The notes: generated from the sequence alone by a model not told the origin. Numbered from the stretch's first letter, positions 8,021 to 85,263 are shown. The stretch is DNA of 124,000 bases from Octopus vulgaris (GCA_951406725.2 OX597825.1:15024001-15148000); one strand, 5' to 3'. Program-made: numbers and translations.

Positions 8021-8064
<44 letters not shown>

Positions 8065-8307
8065 ATAATGAGGGAGATAAGTTGAATATTAATTTAATTA
8101 ATATCAATTTAAAACCAGTAGCCTAACATACAACAATCTGTAAAATCAGAGAAAATTCTAATACATGTGTATATTTAAAGGGCTAAAAAGCCACTAGGAG
8201 GTCAGCCGTATGCTAGAAGTAGATCACCTACGTAGGTGATCGTAGGTGATCTACTTCTAGCATACGGCTGACCACCTAGGTTTGTTTTTAGCCCTTTAAA
8301 TATACAC

Positions 8308-53766: not shown

Positions 53767-55060
53767 AACGTGTTATTTTGTGTGTTGTGTTTTTTTCTGA
53801 ATTATCATTTTGTTTCCTCTTTTTCCTTCAAAGCAATTTTTCATTTCCTTTTTCCTTTTAAAAAAAAAACAAAGTAATTTTACTTACTGTTTTTTTCCTT
53901 TTTAATGTCTCATATAAGGCTCCAGTTCTGTGAGTTCAATTACTGGTGGCAGTTCATCGAACTCCAACAATACTCGGGGTGGGTCAATCTTATTTCCGCA
54001 CATATCTACAAGTTTTTTATAAATTTCTTTATCGACCACAATGGCCTTTACATTTTCTGAGTATACGTCTCTGGGTAATTTTACTCTTATGATGTGTTTA
54101 AATTTCACAATTCTTTTTTCCACTTCCTTGTTTTTAGCATAAGTTACAAAATTCCACTTGTTCTTTCCCCGTCTAGGTTTTTTCCTTTCTGCTTTCTCTA
54201 CCTCTCTTGTTATATATGCCTCTATATTACTTTCCTCCTCCGATTCTGAAACCTTCTCCTTCTCTGTCTCTATTGTAAACAGTTTCTCTATCTCACCCTC
54301 ATGTAGTTGTGCTCCTGAACCTTCCACCAAATCAACTGACATCTTCAACCCCGCTTCCTTCTTCTGTAACTCATTCTCGCACACCTTTTCAATTCTTTTT
54401 CCACTTTCTTTCTCCACCATACTTTTGACATCTTCAAGGCGGTGGGCTGTCAGAAACGTTAGCACGCCGGGCGAAATATGTAGCCGTATTTCGTAGCCGT
54501 ATTTCGTAGCCGTATTTCGTAGCCGTATTTCGTTGTGAGTTCAAATTCCGCCGAGGTCGACTTTGCCTGTCATCCTTTCGGGGGTCGATAAATTAAGTAC
54601 CCGTTACGCACCGGGGCCGATGTAATCGACTTACTCTCTTTGACTGTCCTTGTTTTGTCCTCCCTATGTTTAGCCCCTTGTGAGCAATAAAGAAATACAT
54701 ACTTTTGTCATCTTTCCTTTCCACCTCTTCTTTCTTCTTTTTCTCATTAGCCGGTGGCGGGTTCACTCTTCCGTTCCTTCTTCTTTTTCTTTCAACTAGT
54801 GTGAATCCCTCCTCCGCTGTTTTCTCTTCACTCTCCACATGTACTGCCTCTTCCTTATTCTCTTACATCTCCCCCTCCATTTTTTCTGTGGGCACCACGC
54901 CTTCATGTGGCCTTTCTCACCACATCGAAAGCATACAGGCGGCCTGCCCTCCACCATCCTTCTTAGCGCAAAGCTGTCAGGCAACACTATCTCCTCCGCA
55001 ATCCCATTTAAACACATCAACATCGATAAACAAGCGGTTGACGGGGAATGAAATACAATC
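53767..55060 (-). mobile_element. ORF1/gag-only retroelement, copy B (5'-truncated, interrupted by SINE B)
   Basis: EEIVLPDSFALRRMVEGRPPVCFRCGEKGHMKAWC (CX2CX4HX4C), a K/E-rich linker and RVKLPRDVYSENVKAIVVDKE...IELTELEPYMRH. Confidence 0.8.
54435..54697 (+). mobile_element. SINE family B with an internal 13-mer x4 expansion
   Basis: 17-bp TSD catacttttg(a/t)catctt; (gtagccgtatttc)x4 at 54480-54531. Confidence 0.92.
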
Positions 55061-56522: not shown

Positions 56523-56572
<50 letters not shown>

Positions 56573-57024
56573 ATCAATATAAGGGTAACCGCTGGTGGCA
56601 GAACATTTTTCTTGAATTTTTCGTTACCCTTATATTGATTGATTAGTGAATTTTTGACTAATTCTGAAATTTGTATCAGCAGCTTATATTTACTGCGGAG
56701 TAGATGGCGCGATTACGGTGAATTCGAAAATTTACGATATATAGACCCGAGGCTTAGATGGTGTAGCCTCGTGTATATATATCTGCCTCCTATTTTGGTG
56801 ACTTTGCTGACGAGACAAGCCAAGCGTAAACGGATTTAATTTAATTTAATTAAATTTGATTGCGTGAAGATGTTGAAACATTGCAGGGTACAAAGTTTGA
56901 AGGGGATGAATGTTTTTTATTTTCCTCTAGTTTCAGAATTACTACTATTTTTTGCGGTTTTGAGTTTAGCTGCTCTTTTCAAGTGAGTCGAACGACCTTC
57001 TCAGGGTCATTCCTTAATATTTTG

Positions 57025-57066
<42 letters not shown>

Positions 57067-57304
57067 GTAAATGTAATATGTGACAATTATTCGGTAGCCA
57101 TGATAAAACTCCGCGTTTCGGATGCTGAGGTGGAAATCCACGCCACCGTCTCTTCAGTTATCCGGCCATCGGAAAAACGCTATGAAAAATGACCGTTATA
57201 CAAAGGGAAATTACTGTGCGAATCACCGTTATTAAGAAAAAGAGCTATTCGAATGACCGCTAAGTGAGAGAGTAAAGTGAGGGGGTAAAAAGTTCATAGT
57301 ATTC

Positions 57305-58330
57305 GAAAGGATGAAAGGCAAAGTCGACCTCGGCAGAATTTGGACTCGGAACGTAGCGACAAACGAAATACCTATTTCTTTATTACCCACAAGGGGCTAA
57401 ACATAGAGTGGACAAACAAGGACAGGCGTAGGCATTAATTCGATTACATCGACCACAGTACGTAACTGGTACTAATTTATCGACCCCCGAAAGGATAAAA
57501 GGCAAAGTCGACCTCCGCGCAATTTGAACTCAGACCGTAACGACAGACGAAACACCTATTTCATTATTAACCATAAGGGGCTAAACACAGAGGGGACAAA
57601 CAAGGACAGACATAGGTATTAAGTCGATTACATCGAGCCCAGGGCGTAACTGGTACTTAATTTATCGACCCCGAAAGGATGAAAGGCAAAGTCGACCTCG
57701 GCGGAATTTGAACTCACAACGTAACGACGGACAAAATACTTATTTCTTTATTACCCACAAGGGGCTAAACATAGAGGGGACAAACATGGACAGACATAGG
57801 TATTAAGTCGATTATATTGACCCCAGTGCGTAACTGGTACTTAATTTATCGACCCCGAAAGGATGAAAGGCAAAGTCGACCTCGGCGGAATTTGAACTCA
57901 CAACGTAACGACGGACGAAATACCTATTTCTTTATTACCCAAAAGGGGCTAAACATAGAGGGGACAAACATGGACAGACATAGGTATTAAGTCCATTATA
58001 TCGACCCCAGTGCGTAACTGGTACTTAATTTATCGACCCCGAAAGGATGAAAGGCAAAGTCGACCTCGGCGGAATTTGAACTCAGAACGTAGTAGCAGAC
58101 GAAATACCTATTTCTTTACTACCCAGAAGGGGCTAAACACAGAGAGGACAGACACACGGATTAAATCGAATATACGACCCCAGTGCGTAACTGGCACTTA
58201 TTTAATCGACCCCGAAAAGATGAAAGGCAAAGTCGACCTCGGCGGAGTTTGAACTCACAACTTAACGACAGACGAAATACCGCTAAGCATTTTTCCTGCC
58301 GCGCTAACGTTTCTACCAGCTCGCCGCCTT
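57305..58330 (-). mobile_element. SINE family B concatemer (1 head, 5 complete ~183-bp bodies, 1 partial)
   Basis: aaaggcaaagtcgacc occurs six times at a ~183-bp period; units join tail-to-body at aaagaaatag|gtatttcgtc. Confidence 0.95.
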
Positions 58331-69004: not shown

Positions 69005-69014
<10 letters not shown>

Positions 69015-69355
69015 AAAAAAGGTTTGAAAATGCAATTTAAACGATGTTTATTTACTTAACCGGGTTCACTCTTTGGTAAAAGATTGTCAAAAGTAACATT
69101 AAAAGTAACATTGAATAATATGGGTTCAAAAAAGTTTTTTACATAATTGTCACATTGGATATTATGAATTCAAAAATGTTTTTTTATACAAAATTGTCAC
69201 ATTACATGTATAAATATACATAAATATACAATTTTGAACCCATATTATCCAATGTTATTTTTAATGTTACTTTTGACAATCTTTTCCAAAGAGTGAAACC
69301 GGTTAAGTAAATAAACATCGTTTAAATTGCATTTTCAAACCTTTTTCCTTATATA
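69005..69355. repeat. inverted repeat, ~125-bp arms with ~100-bp spacer, containing a degenerate hammerhead-like motif
   Basis: 69005-69130 is the reverse complement of 69233-69355; ttactt..gaaaccggttaagtaa. Confidence 0.85.
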
Positions 69356-69385
69356 ATCCCAATCGTGCGATACCCCACAACTCAA

Positions 69386-69435
<50 letters not shown>

Positions 69436-69488: not shown

Positions 69489-69532
<44 letters not shown>

Positions 69533-69556
69533 TATATATATACACATGCGCACACT

Positions 69557-69627
<71 letters not shown>

Positions 69628-69887
69628 TGAGGGAGATAAATTAATATTAATTTTAATATCAATTTAAAACCAGTAGTTCAGCATTCAAAAAATCTGAGGA
69701 GTCAGAGAAAATTCAAATATATGTGTATATTGGCAGAGGCTGGCCTGCTAGGTAGCCGGCCATAATGCTAGAAGAAGATCATCAACGATCAAACTACAAG
69801 GGAAATTCTCTAGAGGAAGAATTCAGCGAACACCAGAACCAACTTTGGCGGGCAGGACATATGAAAAATTATATAAATAACAGACTT

Positions 69888-69965
69888 AAATGCATACCTC
69901 GGTTTCGGTCTTAACAAAAGAATTACTTGCATAATTCCAGTGTCCGTGACTTCATCAGTACATTC
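69888..69965 (-). ncRNA. type-I minimal hammerhead ribozyme motif (unit 1)
   Basis: GAAUGUA-CUGAUGA-AGUC...GACC-GAAA-C-CGAG-GUA-UGCAUUU: 7-bp helix I; helix II capped by GAAUUAU-GCAA-GUAAUUC; GUA cleavage triplet; A.C mismatch at the 10.1/11.1 pair. Confidence 0.7.
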
Positions 69966-70433
69966 GGTCCTCGAGATGCAAACCGCAAGACTAACCCCAG
70001 CTCTCAGTGTCAAGACAGACACGTGCTTAGTCTTACTGATTACATCGGGAATAAAATTTCAAATGTCTTGGTTCTGGCGCGCTGAGAGACTCCTGAAGCG
70101 AAGGGCTGCAGTGAATAATTCACTGCGGGTAGTGCTTACAACTAGGGAACATATTTATTTAAATATGTAAAAATTGAGGGAGATAAATTAATATTAATTT
70201 TAATATCAATTTAAAACCAGTAGTCCAGCATTCAAAAAATCTGAGGAGTCAGAGAAAATTCAAATATATGTGTATATTGGCAGAGCTGGCCTGCTAGGTA
70301 GCCGGCCAGAATGCTAGAAGAAGATCATCAACGATCAAACTACAAGGGAAATTCTCTAGAGGAAGAATTAAGCGAACACCAGAACCAGCTTTGGCGGGCA
70401 GGACATATGAAAAATTATATAAATAACAGACTT

Positions 70434-70511
70434 AAATGCATACCTCGGTTTCGGTCTTAACAAAAGAATTACTTGCATAATTCCAGTGTCCGTGACTTCA
70501 TCAGTACATTC
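70434..70511 (-). ncRNA. type-I minimal hammerhead ribozyme motif (unit 2)
   Basis: Same sequence as the unit-1 motif, 546 nt away. Confidence 0.7.
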
Positions 70512-71148
70512 GGTCCTCGAGATGCAAACCGCAAGACTAACCCCAGCTCTCAGTGTCGAGACAGTCACGTGCTTAGTCTTACTGATTACATCGGGAATAA
70601 AATTTCAAATGTCTTGGTTCTGGCGCACTGAGAGACTCCTGAAGCAAAGGGCTGCAGTGAATAATTCACTGCGGGTAGTGCTTACAACTAGGGAACGTAT
70701 TTATTTAAATATTTAAAAATTGAGGGAGATAAATTAATATTAATTTTAATATCAATTTAAAACCAGTAGTCCAGCATTCAAAAAATCTGAGGAGTCAGAG
70801 AAAATTCAAATATATGTGTATGTTGGGAGATATTGGCAGGAGTCTCTCAGCGCGCCAGAACCAAGACATTTGAAATTTTATTCCCGATGTAATCAGTAAG
70901 ACTAAGCACGTGTCTGTCTCGACACAGAGAGCTGGGGTTAGTCTTGCGGTTTGCATCTCGAGGACCGAATGTACCGAGGTATGCATTTAAGTCTGTTATT
71001 TATATAATTTTTCATATGTCCTGCCCGCCAAAGTTGGTTCTGGTGTTCGCTGAATTCTTCCTCTAGAGAATTTCCCTTGTAGTTTGATCGTTGATGATCT
71101 TCTTCTAGCATCCTGGCCAGCTACCTAGCAGGCCAGCCCTGGCAATAT

Positions 71149-71596
<448 letters not shown>

Positions 71597-73990: not shown

Positions 73991-75301
73991 TAGATATAAC
74001 ATAGTGAAGTGAATTGACTCCACAGACATTAACCGAAATGAATCTATGAGACAGGCGTCCAAAGAACACTAGATGCGATCTGGCGTGCTTTTTGTGTCCT
74101 AGGAATATTACCAGTTTCTCGTTCAAAGTCCAATTATATATTATTTTGCAAGTGATGTTGTGCTATGTCGTTGAAAGACACCACATATGTGCAGCGCAAG
74201 ACACAGTCTTCATTGTTATAAATATGGGATACATATGTACTTACTTGTAATTGTGGCGACATTCACCCTGGGCGGGTTGAGTTGGTTTCTTTCACCACCC
74301 TCGAGGCATCTCGAACCATGGCGGTGGAAGAAGTTTCGTGGGAATATGTAGATTTCACAAGCGGTCCCCTACAATCCCGCATGTAAAGATATCCTGTTTG
74401 CCGCAGATTGTCCGCAGACGCAGGTACAGAACGACCGAGGAGCCGCCGGTTGCCGAAACAGACACTCCGAGGATCTTCACCAGAACCCCTTCTGCCGGGT
74501 TGTGGCCCTAATACCACTCGGTGTCAGACCAATCCGCCTTGGGTGGCCCTACCAGGAACCGAAGTTCCCGACGGCATAGCTCTGACACTACTAGTTGCCA
74601 GCGTCCGTACCACGGTGAGGAGGGTATGGACTTTGGGATACATATGTGAGCGCTCCATCGCAAACGAAAAGATGAAATGAGCCATGTTGTATACTGGGGT
74701 CAATATATTATAATACCTGCGTAAGCTACAAATGTTTACAAGCCAATGGGCATCACACTTAGTATGACAGATAAGTTGAGGATAGAGCCAAGAATTTTAG
74801 AAGAAAATTTACGAAGCACCATTAGTAATCTAATTCATTTGAATGCAACGTAATAAGTATATTTCGCTTTAGATATATATATGAAAAATACTTAACTAAT
74901 GCAGAAGTTCCGAAAAAGAATAACATTTATTCTGAATGATGTGACTTTTCAAGTGCAAAATATCAATTTAAATCTAGTGGAAATTGATTTTCATTTCTAT
75001 TTACCTAAGTTATTTCAGCTTTAAAGAGTACACGTCAATATATAGAGTTGCTATATAGATAAAGATGAAAGGGTAAGCTCACCCGTATAAATTTGAATGT
75101 AAACACAATGATACTCACCTGCACACTTGAATATGTGCATCTCTTAAAAATAAGAACGAACACACAGACACACACACACACACACACACGCGCATAAAAG
75201 ATGCAGCGACGGCTACAAAGTATTATACATACACGGGTATTCATAGTAGATCCATACATAAATATATGCATAAATACATGCATACACAAATACACATACA
75301 T

Positions 75302-83430: not shown

Positions 83431-83723
83431 TGAAAGATCAATTCCAGTACCACAGGAATGAGACATTCATATTTAAAATGTTAAATTGAATTACTTTCAA
83501 TAATTAATTCTTATATATCAAAATAGTGTTAGAGATAGAACCACCCACAACTTCATCAACTCCAAACGATATTATATTAACCAAGCTATAGAATATTAAA
83601 TATTATACTTATTATTTACATTCATAATCCCAAACTTTTTCCATATTACTGACTACACATGTTTCATGTGTACGTATGGTATTGTTAAGACACAATGTCT
83701 CATTCAAAAATTCATATATATAT

Positions 83724-83879
83724 GGAGTGGTTGTGTGGTAAGTAGCTTGCTAACCAACCTCATGGTTCCGGGTTCAGTCCCACTGCGTGGCACCTTGGGC
83801 AAGTGTCTTCTGTTATAGCCCCGGCCCGACCAATGCCTTGTGAGTGGATTTGGTAGACGGAAACTGAACGAAGCCTGTC

Positions 83880-83921
<42 letters not shown>

Positions 83922-84130
83922 TTGTGTGTCTGTGTTTGTTCCCCTAGCATTGCTTGACAACCGATGCTGGTGTGTTTACGTCCCCGTCACTTAGCGGTTC
84001 GGCAAAAAGAGACCGATAGAATAAGTACTGGGCTTACAAAGAATAAGTCCCGGGGTCGATTTGTTCGACTAAAGGCGGTGCTCCAGCATGGCCGCAGTCA
84101 AATGACTGAAACAAGTAAAAGAGTAAAGAG
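83724..84130 (+). mobile_element. SINE family C, full length
   Basis: gtgtggtaagtagcttgctaacc...actgaaacaagtaaaagagtaaagag. Confidence 0.92.
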
Positions 84131-84151
84131 TATATATATATATAATATATT

Positions 84152-84301
84152 TTCTTTTCTACTCCAGGTTCCAGGCCCGAAATTAGATCGACACTAGTAG
84201 GCAAGTGGTACTTAATTTACAGACCCTGAAAGGATAAAAAGCACAGTCGACCTCGGCGGAATTTGAACTCAGAACGAAAAGACAGATTAAATATCGCTAA
84301 G
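84152..84301 (-). mobile_element. SINE family B, partial
   Basis: gaccctgaaaggataaaaagcacagtcgacctcggcggaatttgaactc. Confidence 0.8.
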
Positions 84302-84431: not shown

Positions 84432-84471
<40 letters not shown>

Positions 84472-84588
84472 AAAAGCAATAAAGATTCAAGTTAATTTAA
84501 AAGAATTTACTTGAATATGGTACCTAACTTAGATGCACCAAAAAAAACTATACTGATTTAACAATACAGTAATGTGGGGTGATTATAA

Positions 84589-84900
84589 GCGAGAATGAAG
84601 CAACAAGAATGGATAGGTTTTTAGTACAATCGTTTCATACAAGGACAGGTTTATTAAAAGTTGCAAAAATTACAGCATATAAACGTGTCCCGTACTCATC
84701 AGCTAAAATACATGTGAGTTCTCTAGACATCCTAGTGGTTGAGCCTCAACCACTAGGATGTCTAGAGAACTCACATGTATTTTAGCTGATGAGTACGGGA
84801 CACGTTTATATGCTGTAATTTTTGCAACTTTTAATAAAACCTGTCCTTGTATGAAACGATTGTACTAAAAACCTATCCATTCTTGTTGCTTCATTCTCGC
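84589..84900. repeat. near-perfect 312-bp palindrome (1-nt spacer at 84744)
   Basis: Arms of ~155 bp are reverse-complementary; centre ggttgag-c-ctcaacc. Confidence 0.95.
84780..84870 (+). ncRNA. type-I minimal hammerhead ribozyme motif (mirrored on the - strand at ~84619-84709)
   Basis: UUUUAG-CUGAUGA-GUACGGGACA...UGUCCUUGUAU-GAAA-C-GAUU-GUA-CUAAAA: 6-bp helix I, ~10-bp helix II, intact core. Confidence 0.78.
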
Positions 84901-85263
84901 GTATATATATATACATATATGTGTGTGTATATATGTGCGTATGCATATATATGTTACATACATATATGTGTAAGTACATGTAGAAATGAGTGTGTATGTA
85001 TATTAATGCTTCTTTATGGAAATGTGCTGTATAAATCTACATATGAATAGGGAAGGATGTATATAGACATCCACAAGGAGAAAAGAGCAAAAAGGAAATC
85101 AGTCCATATTTACCATTCATTTACAATAACAATATTTAAATATCGTAAATTTTATCTCAGTTATTTAATTATTGTTATACTACTTCATATCCACTTATTC
85201 TTCATTGAATTTCGTTTTGATTTTAAAAGTATTATTGTTTTTTATCGTTGTTGTGCATAATGA

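What the first reader, a model, noticed from the sequence alone, without database searches (positions are those of the whole stretch)
69624..70830. 546-bp tandem units, each carrying a hammerhead ribozyme: a retrozyme-like circular-RNA system
Seen in sequence: near-identical ~546-bp head-to-tail units with no credible ORF. Each has one minus-strand type-I hammerhead motif: 7-bp helix I, intact CUGAUGA and GAAA, GUA site, an unusually long helix II capped by a GCAA (GNRA) hairpin, and a 2-bp helix III. The helix III sequence ACCGAGGU could pair between two adjacent copies as 8 bp with tandem G.A pairs. Established: minimal type-I hammerheads with dimer-forming helix III occur in Penelope-like elements and metazoan non-LTR retrozymes, whose multimeric transcripts self-cleave into monomers that circularise. 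Inference: this family would give a ~546-nt monomer/circRNA; I do not know whether it has been described in this lineage. Caveat: both copies have A.C instead of G-C at the base of helix II, which may reduce activity.
Basis: partly seen in the sequence, partly recalled or inferred. Interest (0 to 1): 0.9.

Follow-up and report, generated by a model that had tools for sequence, protein, structure and literature searches.

The report
Octopus hammerhead-ribozyme retroelement in a TA microsatellite
This is a small non-coding, Penelope-type retroelement that carries a hammerhead ribozyme motif and sits in a (TA)n microsatellite of an octopus-like genome; it is a genuine new example of an already known kind of element, and whether it cleaves or forms RNA circles is untested.

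Summary
There are 2.2 head-to-tail units of 546/547 bp (98% identical) with no credible ORF. Each full unit has a complete type-I hammerhead motif on the minus strand, with the cut at 69895/69894 and 70441/70440.

The motif is unlikely to be chance. The same descriptor finds exact motifs at three unrelated loci in the window, against 0.02-0.04 expected. Rfam's hammerhead models score none of the three.

The array sits between (TA)n runs. An inverted, 5'-truncated copy (70841-71153) meets it head to head and lacks exactly the 51 nt from C3 to A15.1. A 77%-identical relative at 8063-8305 has the same two outer end points. This layout is the published signature of insertion by Penelope-like elements (PLEs). 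No RT/endonuclease ORF was found in the ORFs scanned.

Best reading: a non-autonomous PLE derivative, that is, a non-LTR retrozyme. The one protein-like ORF in the window matches only an Octopus bimaculoides protein. Self-cleavage and a 546-nt circle are inferred only. The A.C mismatch at positions 10.1/11.1 may weaken this copy.

Verdict: new member of a known kind, moderate interest.

The parts
69489..69623 (.). Left flank: (TA)n microsatellite, the presumed target. The element begins directly after it.
   Evidence: TRF; sequence; end-point test.
69624..70170 (-). Unit 1 (547 bp). It is the 3'-most unit on the sense (minus) strand. The sense 3' end ...CUCCCUCAAUUU abuts (TA)n.
69888..69965 (-). 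Hammerhead motif 1 (type I). Predicted cut between 69895 and 69894.
70171..70716 (-). Unit 2 (546 bp, 98% identical to unit 1).
70434..70511 (-). Hammerhead motif 2, identical to motif 1. Predicted cut between 70441 and 70440.
70717..70840 (-). Partial unit 3: the 5'-truncated end of the cDNA. It holds the sense 3'-terminal ~114 nt of a unit, followed by a ~10-nt stutter (ATATTGGCAG) at the head-to-head junction.
70841..71153 (+). Inverted, 5'-truncated copy with its sense on the plus strand (unit positions 472 to ~99). It lacks the 51 nt from C3 to A15.1, that is, both core strands and helix II. The deletion junction is at 70973-70977. Its outer end lies at the internal AUAUACACAUAU motif.
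   Evidence: (inverted repeats I1-I4).
71149..71325 (.). Right flank: (CA)n followed by (TA)n microsatellite.
8063..8305 (.). Diverged relative of the same family (77% identical). A minus-sense 3' part (8063-8234) meets an inverted arm (8237-8305). It lies inside (TA)n and has the same two outer end points as the main locus. It is 5'-truncated before the hammerhead.
84471..84902 (.). Separate family B. Two head-to-head copies in (TA)n, each with an exact hammerhead (84619-84708 on the minus strand, 84780-84870 on the plus strand). One arm extends ~118 nt further than the other.
56571..57027 (+). Separate family C. One copy between (TA)n runs, with a hammerhead at 56800-56897 and a short snap-back inverted repeat at its 5' end (56571-56590 against 56626-56645).

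Best explanation
The locus is one insertion of a short (546-nt), non-coding, hammerhead-bearing retroelement. It is a non-autonomous derivative of Penelope-like elements, the class called non-LTR retrozymes. The genome looks like an octopus genome.

Proposed mechanism:
1. A PLE RT/GIY-YIG enzyme supplied in trans nicked both strands of a (TA)n microsatellite. This step is inferred from published PLE biochemistry.
2. On one strand, reverse transcription started at the element's 3' site (...CUCCCUCAAUUU). It ran through 2.2 units of a multimeric, or possibly circular, RNA. This gave units 1, 2 and partial unit 3.
3. On the other strand, reverse transcription started about 98 nt further in, at AUAUACACAUAU, and copied about 0.6 unit.
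4. The two 5'-truncated cDNAs were joined head to head at about 70840.

The layout, the two conserved end points and the microsatellite target are shown by the sequence.

When a multimer is transcribed from the minus strand, each hammerhead would cut after GUA. It may act as a dimer through the self-pairing ACCGAGGU, and perhaps needs protein. The product would be a 546-nt monomer with 5'-OH and 2',3'-cyclic phosphate ends, which a tRNA ligase such as RtcB could circularise. This step is inferred and untested.

The A10.1.C11.1 mismatch probably weakens this particular copy.
For: Motif:
- Exact core, three helices and a GUA site in both units.
- 5 hits at 3 loci against 0.02-0.04 expected.

Features that the descriptor did not demand, yet all three families share:
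- a long, rod-like helix II whose ends pair when it is folded alone
- a quasi-palindromic helix III plus loop 3; dimer energies are -6.6, -5.8 and -5.7 kcal/mol, and only 9-12% of random 8-mers built like A and B's helix III do as well as either

PLE insertion signature:
- Tandem units plus an adjacent inverted 5'-truncated copy, as described for PLEs.
- Element ends abut (TA)n: 6 of 8 ends lie within 12 bp of a perfect (TA)>=8 run, where a random position does so 4.8% of the time. A (TA)n or AT-rich target bias is published.
- Two discrete outer end points about 98 nt apart are shared by two independent insertions that are 77% identical. This matches the PLE 'tail', which corresponds to two internal RT start sites, and extension of both DNA strands.

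Non-autonomous:
- No ORF longer than 76 aa in a unit.
- No Pfam domain in the window's 10 largest ORFs or in 10 ORFs in and around the locus.

Fit to the known class:
- Published size ranges cover it: consensus 51-972 bp, and 75% of families have at most 7 units. The same preprint reports a pLTR origin for retrozymes.
- Unit GC is 39%, which fits the reported low GC.

Lineage: the only homologue of the ORF at 53902-54465 is an Octopus bimaculoides protein (68% identity). PLEs are abundant in cephalopods.
Against: - No Rfam hammerhead model scores the motif, even at E<=10.
- G10.1-C11.1, reported as highly conserved in PLE hammerheads, is A.C here.
- The hammerhead-constrained fold (-12.3 kcal/mol) is less stable than the free MFE (-14.9), and the fold is not unusually stable.
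- There is no variation within the motif between the two copies, so there is no covariation test.
- No copies from elsewhere in the genome could be fetched.
- No autonomous PLE was seen, so the partner enzyme is unknown.
- The 'tail' is about 98 nt, against the 30-40 bp described for PLEs.
- For the one PLE tested in vitro, the hammerhead was not needed for insertion, and no RNA-seq reads ended at its cut site.
Confidence: 0.75

Rival explanations
1. The units are pseudo-LTR (pLTR) remnants of an ordinary autonomous PLE. On this view it is a heavily deleted or truncated PLE insertion rather than a dedicated non-autonomous retrozyme family.
For: Retrozymes and pLTRs are homologous in frogs. PLE insertions are usually 5'-truncated and tandem or inverted. 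The genome could not be searched for ORF-bearing relatives.
Against: - Two complete units follow head to tail with a 546-bp period and no coding sequence between them. An autonomous tandem would have a period of about 3-4 kb.
- A 77%-diverged relative has the same ends and also no ORF.
- No Pfam domain was found in the ORFs of at least 80 aa scanned within about 10 kb of the locus, nor in the window's 10 largest ORFs.
Confidence: 0.12
2. The identification is right but this copy is an inert fossil. The G10.1 to A change has disabled the ribozyme, the array is not transcribed, and no monomer or circle is made from this locus.
For: - Both copies have A.C at 10.1/11.1, whereas G10.1-C11.1 is highly conserved.
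- The copies have each diverged by about 1%.
- PLE-type hammerheads cleave poorly in vitro even when intact.
Against: - Families B and C also lack G-C at this position (both have G.U), so a non-canonical base of helix II may be tolerated in this lineage.
- There are no substitutions in the 78-nt motif between units, although only about 1.5 would be expected.
Confidence: 0.4
3. The hammerhead-like motif is a chance match inside an ordinary tandem repeat or some other transposon, such as a MITE or a Helitron-borne satellite.
For: All Rfam models are negative. Thermodynamic stability is unremarkable. There is a mismatch at the base of helix II.
Against: - Expected chance hits are 0.02-0.04 per window, against 3 independent loci observed.
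- All three loci share features that were not searched for and a PLE-type layout in (TA)n.
- There are no terminal inverted repeats or target-site duplications.
Confidence: 0.04

Closest known systems
Metazoan non-LTR retrozymes (Cervera & de la Pena 2020, PMC7229834; Li et al. 2026 preprint, 10.64898/2026.07.22.740005)
   Same: Non-coding, low-GC tandem units, each with one type-I hammerhead and a short helix III that may need dimerisation. The class is reported in molluscs (mussel). A 546-bp unit and 2.2 copies fall inside the published ranges. The preprint reports that these elements derive from PLE pLTRs.
   Different: - Helix II is very long: 45 nt with internal loops, against about 4 bp.
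- A.C replaces G-C at 10.1/11.1.
- The motif is invisible to the Rfam hammerhead models.
- The array carries an inverted copy and sits in (TA)n.
- Expression as circRNA has not been shown here.
Minimal hammerheads in the pLTRs of Penelope-like elements (Cervera & de la Pena 2014, PMC4209133)
   Same: Type I, an enlarged helix II, a tiny palindromic helix III that implies action as a dimer, and location in elements that insert as tandem and inverted arrays.
   Different: - There is no RT/GIY-YIG ORF between the repeats.
- Helix I is longer here (7 bp against 4-5).
[quoted passage not shown]
PLE integration mechanism (Frangieh et al. 2024, PMC11167929; Craig et al. 2021, PMC8557442)
   Same: Both DNA strands are extended, giving head-to-head copies. 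There are two discrete RT start sites, which leaves a 'tail' at one end only. The template is a multimeric RNA. The target is AT-rich or (TA)n, and no target-site duplication can be seen.
   Different: - The tail here is about 98 nt (about 118 nt in family B), against 30-40 bp.
- In Craig et al. the (TA)n preference is documented for Naiads, which lack canonical hammerheads.
- The partner PLE is unknown.
Newt and salamander satellite 2 hammerheads, and the Schistosoma SM-alpha hammerhead repeats (named from my own knowledge and from the introductions read)
   Same: Genomic repeats that carry type-I hammerheads. The weak helix III favours cleavage as a dimer in multimeric transcripts.
   Different: Those have a canonical short helix II with loop-loop contacts and very high copy numbers. 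No sequence relationship to this element was tested.

Membership tests
Hammerhead ribozyme, type I | Conserved core: C3 U4 G5 A6 N7 G8 A9, G12 A13 A14, the A15.1-U16.1 pair, and H17 (not G). | tested here: met
   CUGAUGA, GAAA and GUA are exact in both units.
Hammerhead ribozyme, type I | Three helices around the core, with helix I open-ended. | tested here: met
   Helix I has 7 bp. Helix II is closed at its base when folded alone. Helix III has 2 bp plus a tetraloop.
Hammerhead ribozyme, type I | A G10.1-C11.1 pair at the base of helix II (highly conserved but not invariant). | tested here: not met
   A.C in both units. Families B and C have G.U. The conservation is stated in PMC4209133.
Hammerhead ribozyme, type I | A match to a curated covariance model (Rfam Hammerhead_1 and related models). 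| tested here: not met
   No hit at the gathering score or at E<=10. Families B and C are also missed.
Hammerhead ribozyme, type I | Covariation in the helices across family members. | tested here: inconclusive
   The two copies are identical in the motif, and no other copies could be obtained. Three unrelated families keep the pairing with different sequences, but they cannot be aligned as homologues.
Hammerhead ribozyme, type I | Site-specific self-cleavage. | not testable with these tools
   Needs in-vitro transcription of monomer and dimer constructs.
Non-LTR retrozyme | Head-to-tail non-coding repeats, each with a type-I hammerhead. | tested here: met
Non-LTR retrozyme | Unit size and copy number within the described range, and low GC. 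| tested here: met
   546 bp, 2.2 units and 39% GC, against a 51-972 bp consensus, mostly 7 units or fewer, and under 45-50% GC.
Non-LTR retrozyme | Expressed as linear and circular unit-length RNA. | not testable with these tools
   No transcriptome data are reachable.
Non-LTR retrozyme | A dispersed multi-copy family in the genome. | tested here: inconclusive
   One diverged relative was found within the 124-kb window. The genome itself is not searchable.
PLE-type insertion (autonomous or not) | A partial tandem plus an adjacent inverted 5'-truncated copy. | tested here: met
   The feature is described in PMC8557442.
PLE-type insertion (autonomous or not) | A 'tail': two alternative 3' end points, with the extension at one end only. 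| tested here: met
   The same two end points occur in two independent insertions, and family B shows the same pattern. The tail is longer than the published 30-40 bp.
PLE-type insertion (autonomous or not) | An AT-rich or microsatellite target. | tested here: met
Autonomous Penelope-like element | An ORF with a telomerase-like RT and a GIY-YIG endonuclease. | tested here: not met
   No Pfam domain in 20 ORFs: the window's 10 largest and 10 in and around the locus.
PLE-type insertion (autonomous or not) | Sequence homology of the unit to the pLTR of an autonomous PLE of the same genome. | not testable with these tools
   No eukaryotic genome or repeat library is available.

The most novel reading that the evidence does not exclude
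Octopus genomes may hold many families of hammerheads with a long helix II (45-61 nt) and a non-canonical 10.1/11.1 pair, which standard covariance models do not detect. These would be carried by short ORF-less elements that home to (TA)n. In Craig et al. that target preference is reported for Naiad PLEs, which lack canonical hammerheads and occur in Octopus spp. If Naiads mobilise these elements, the hammerhead modules would be parasites of PLE machinery rather than parts of it, a possibility raised in PMC8557442. The precise loss of C3-A15.1 in the inverted copy would then be a footprint of reverse transcriptase skipping the folded helix II domain. That would be in-vivo evidence that the RNA adopts the hammerhead fold.
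Probability: 0.15. Interest if true: 0.6.

Novelty: new member of a known kind. Interest (0 to 1): 0.35.

Why it matters
It would add cephalopods to the animals known to carry retrozyme-type elements. I found no paper that describes them there. Across the three literature searches, only Craig et al. 2021 joins cephalopods and hammerheads in a PLE context, and the only cephalopod hammerhead record found is a count of 235 Rfam hits in the giant squid genome.

Three unrelated hammerhead families in 124 kb, all missed by Rfam, suggest that model-based annotation undercounts them in this lineage.

The locus is also a clean natural example of the recently proposed PLE mechanism: priming on both strands, two RT start sites and a microsatellite target. 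It could help identify which PLE clade mobilises hammerhead-bearing parasites.

It does not open a new category. Activity and circularisation remain unproven.

Tried and rejected
- Rfam at the gathering score on the whole window, and at E<=10 on each of the three loci. No hammerhead hit was found. The sub-threshold miRNA-like hits are artefacts of (TA)n runs and palindromes.
- TRF. It cannot see a 546-bp period because its longest period is 500.
- Searching for other family copies: a homologue search with the 70-aa ORF across the motif, exact look-ups of the 76-aa and 49-aa unit ORFs, and exact-pattern scans of metagenome and viral contigs. All were empty. The collections hold no searchable eukaryotic DNA, so family consensus, copy number and covariation could not be obtained.
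- Searching for an autonomous PLE: Pfam on 20 ORFs. Nothing was found.
- A relaxed descriptor allowing one core mismatch. It added only two weak hits (59403 and 103764), against 0.15 expected by chance, and I treated them as noise.
- Primary-sequence homology between families A, B and C. None was found beyond the core.
- Reading the extra A after A9 as the bulged nucleotide typical of PLE mini-hammerheads. I rejected this because it would give G10.1-C11.1 followed by U.C and C.A mismatches. The A.C mismatch followed by 3 bp is the better reading.
- Deletion in the inverted copy by slippage between the 7-nt direct repeat GACCGAA. I rejected this because the product would read GACCGAAACCGAGG. 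The observed GACCGAAUGUACCGAGG needs a jump with only the 2-nt AC microhomology.
- ARAGORN. No tRNA genes were found.

Full report
**1. What is there**

The region 69624-70830 holds two complete units and a partial third. Unit 1 is 69624-70170 (547 bp). Unit 2 is 70171-70716 (546 bp, 98.0% identical). The partial unit is 70717-70830 (97.4%). TRF did not report the array because its longest period is 500.

The longest ORF touching a unit is 76 aa with a GTG start. The unit ORFs have no Pfam match. The 70-aa ORF that spans the motif has no homologue among 5.8 billion proteins. Unit GC is 39%, against 34% for the window.

**2. The hammerhead motif**

On the minus strand each full unit reads:

GAAUGUA-CUGAUGA-[45 nt]-GAAA-CCGAGG-UA|UGCAUUU

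- The core is exact.
- Helix I has 7 bp, two of them G.U, and can extend by 4 more pairs beyond a small internal loop.
- Helix II starts with an A.C mismatch at 10.1/11.1. It continues with G-C, U-A and C-G, an internal loop, 4 bp, an internal loop, and 8 bp capped by GCAA.
- Helix III is A-U and C-G with the loop CGAG.
- The predicted cuts are at 69895/69894 and 70441/70440, exactly 546 nt apart.
- ACCGAGGU self-pairs with a cofold energy of -6.6 kcal/mol. Only 9% of comparable random 8-mers do as well.

**3. Is it more than chance?**

I used a descriptor no stricter than this candidate: CUGANGA; a helix II domain of 8-70 nt with at least 3 bp at its base, one mismatch or bulge allowed; GAAA; a 2-bp helix III with a 2-8 nt loop; U and then not-G; and a helix I of at least 5 bp.

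It gives 5 hits in the window at 3 independent loci. It gives 0.02 hits per dinucleotide-preserving shuffle over 300 shuffles. As a control that keeps the real sequence, 150 permuted decoy cores give 0.04 hits on average, with a maximum of 2. The motif is not a chance match.

Rfam's hammerhead models give nothing at the gathering score or at E<=10. They also miss family B, which has an equally exact core and a cleaner helix II, and family C. The negative result therefore reflects the 45-61-nt helix II rather than the absence of a hammerhead.

The free MFE fold is not unusually stable (z = -0.28). It is slightly more stable than the hammerhead-constrained fold (-14.9 against -12.3 kcal/mol).

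**4.

(a) The array is bounded by (TA)n on the left (69489-69623) and by (CA)n(TA)n on the right (71149-71325).

(b) An inverted partial copy lies at 70841-71153. It covers unit positions 472 down to about 99 and is 97-98% identical to the units. Its sense strand is the plus strand, so it meets the array head to head at about 70840. A 10-nt stutter and a short microhomology mark the junction.

(c) This copy lacks 51 nt, precisely C3 through A15.1. That removes both core strands and all of helix II, and joins the 5' strand of helix I directly to C15.2.

(d) A 77%-identical relative lies at 8063-8305, also inside (TA)n. It is also built as two head-to-head arms. In both loci one arm ends at ...CUCCCUCA(A/U)U... 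next to (TA)n. The other arm ends about 98 nt further in, at the internal AUAUACACAU(A/G)UAU motif.

(e) Two further families are unrelated to this one in sequence.
- Family B (84471-84902) is a head-to-head pair in (TA)n. Each arm has a hammerhead, and one arm is about 118 nt longer than the other.
- Family C (56571-57027) is a single copy between (TA)n runs, with a small snap-back at its 5' end.

(f) All three families share features the descriptor did not ask for:
- a rod-like helix II of 45-61 nt whose ends pair when it is folded alone
- GUA as the cleavage triplet
- a quasi-palindromic helix III plus loop 3: ACCGAGGU, ACGAUUGU and ACAUUGCAGGGU
- a non-G-C pair at 10.1/11.1: A.C, G.U and G.U

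(g) Six of the eight element ends lie within 12 bp of a perfect (TA)>=8 run. A random position does so 4.8% of the time. The other two ends abut (CA)n(TA)n or a shorter TA run.

**5. What it is**

The layout matches the published signature of insertions by Penelope-like elements (PLEs):
- partial tandems
- an adjacent inverted 5'-truncated copy
- a one-sided 'tail'
- a microsatellite target, (TA)n for Naiads, with no visible target-site duplication (PMC8557442)

The one in-vitro study of a PLE explains these features (PMC11167929). The enzyme cleaves and extends both DNA strands. It starts reverse transcription at two internal sites, and the interval between them is the 'tail'. It prefers AT-rich DNA and is proposed to copy a multi-copy RNA.

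Here, one cDNA began at the 3' site and ran through 2.2 units. The other began at the second site and ran through about 0.6 unit. Both are 5'-truncated and meet in the middle.

No RT or GIY-YIG ORF was found in the window's 10 largest ORFs or in the ORFs of at least 80 aa scanned within about 10 kb of the locus. Complete units also follow one another with a 546-bp period. The element is therefore non-autonomous.

That is what the literature calls a non-LTR retrozyme (PMC7229834). A 2026 preprint reports that these elements are derivatives of PLE pLTRs, with consensus lengths of 51-972 bp and mostly 7 units or fewer.

The only homologue of the one protein-like ORF in the window (53902-54465) is an Octopus bimaculoides protein at 68% identity. 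From memory, the tRNA-derived SINEs in the window also resemble octopus SINEs, but I did not verify this. PLEs, including Naiads, are recorded as abundant in cephalopods.

**6. How it would work, and what is not shown**

- Shown by sequence: the motif, the tandem spacing of the cut sites, and the insertion architecture.
- Inferred from the class: multimeric minus-strand transcripts are cut after GUA, probably by hammerheads acting as dimers through the self-pairing helix III. The 546-nt product would be circularised by a tRNA ligase.
- Not tested: transcription, cleavage and circles.

There are four cautions.
- G10.1-C11.1 is highly conserved in PLE hammerheads and is A.C here.
- PLE-type hammerheads cleave poorly in vitro.
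- The anole PLE hammerhead needed the element's protein, was dispensable for insertion, and left no reads ending at its cut site.
- This locus may simply be an inert copy.

Unit 1, unit 2 and the inverted copy each carry 3-5 private substitutions over the region all three share (unit positions 99-472). This is a star-like pattern of about 1% per copy. None of these changes lies in the motif, but only about 1.5 would be expected there.

**7. The 51-nt deletion**

The deletion is not explained by slippage on the 7-nt GACCGAA direct repeat, because the product sequence differs from what that would give. It needs a jump with only a 2-nt AC microhomology.

A reverse transcriptase that skips the folded helix II domain of the three-way junction would produce exactly this product. 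This is an inference. It could be tested by counting independent occurrences of the deletion in the genome.

**8. Comparison and novelty**

The element works like a metazoan non-LTR retrozyme and meets the features of that class that can be tested here. It differs in four ways:
- the very long helix II
- the non-canonical 10.1/11.1 pair
- invisibility to Rfam
- the (TA)n target; in the paper I read, a (TA)n preference is reported for Naiads, which lack canonical hammerheads

I found no paper that describes retrozymes or PLE hammerheads in cephalopods. The only record is 235 Rfam Hammerhead_1 hits in the giant squid genome annotation.

My verdict is a new member of a known kind, with some variant features, and moderate interest.

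**9. Limits**

No eukaryotic genome or transcriptome could be searched. Copy number, the family consensus at position 10.1, covariation, the autonomous partner and expression all remain open.

Noticed in passing
window 84471-84902: Family B is a second, unrelated hammerhead-bearing element. Two head-to-head copies sit in (TA)n with an almost perfect palindromic junction at about 84750. The hammerheads are exact (G.U at 10.1/11.1, a helix II of 59-60 nt, and ACGAUUGU, which is fully self-pairing). Rfam sees only miRNA-like palindrome artefacts here.
   Followed up: yes
window 56571-57027: Family C is a third unrelated hammerhead-bearing element. It is a single copy between (TA)n runs, with CUGACGA, a 61-nt helix II and a 20-nt snap-back inverted repeat at its 5' end.
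   Followed up: yes
window 69013-69392: Just upstream of the finding lies a ~340-bp element made almost entirely of two ~115-170-bp inverted arms (83.5% self-complementary), between (AT)n and (TA)n. It contains a 44-bp tandem duplication at 69108-69203. It has no hammerhead. It could be a head-to-head PLE-type insertion of another family or a MITE.
   Followed up: partly
window 71326 to about 71560; also about 83720-84120, 84170-84300 and 57300-57700: There are multiple copies of a tRNA-derived SINE (GGCGAGCTGG.AGAAACGTTAGCACGCCGGGCGAAA...). One is inserted directly at the right end of the (TA)n run that flanks the finding. ARAGORN calls none of them as tRNA.
   Followed up: no
window 53902-54465 (minus strand): This 187-aa Glu/Lys-rich ORF is the only protein-like ORF among the large ones. 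Its sole homologue is an uncharacterised Octopus bimaculoides protein (A0A0L8HFY3; 68% identity over 57% of the query). It has no Pfam domain.
   Followed up: partly
whole window: (TA)n is extremely frequent: 102 perfect runs of at least 8 repeats in 124 kb, about one per 1.2 kb. Several of the runs I looked at border short repeats arranged head to head. This suggests that (TA)n-targeting retroelements shape much of this region.
   Followed up: partly
window 74263-74680: A locally GC-rich stretch has overlapping ORFs of 84-90 aa on both strands and no Pfam match. Its nature was not examined.
   Followed up: no
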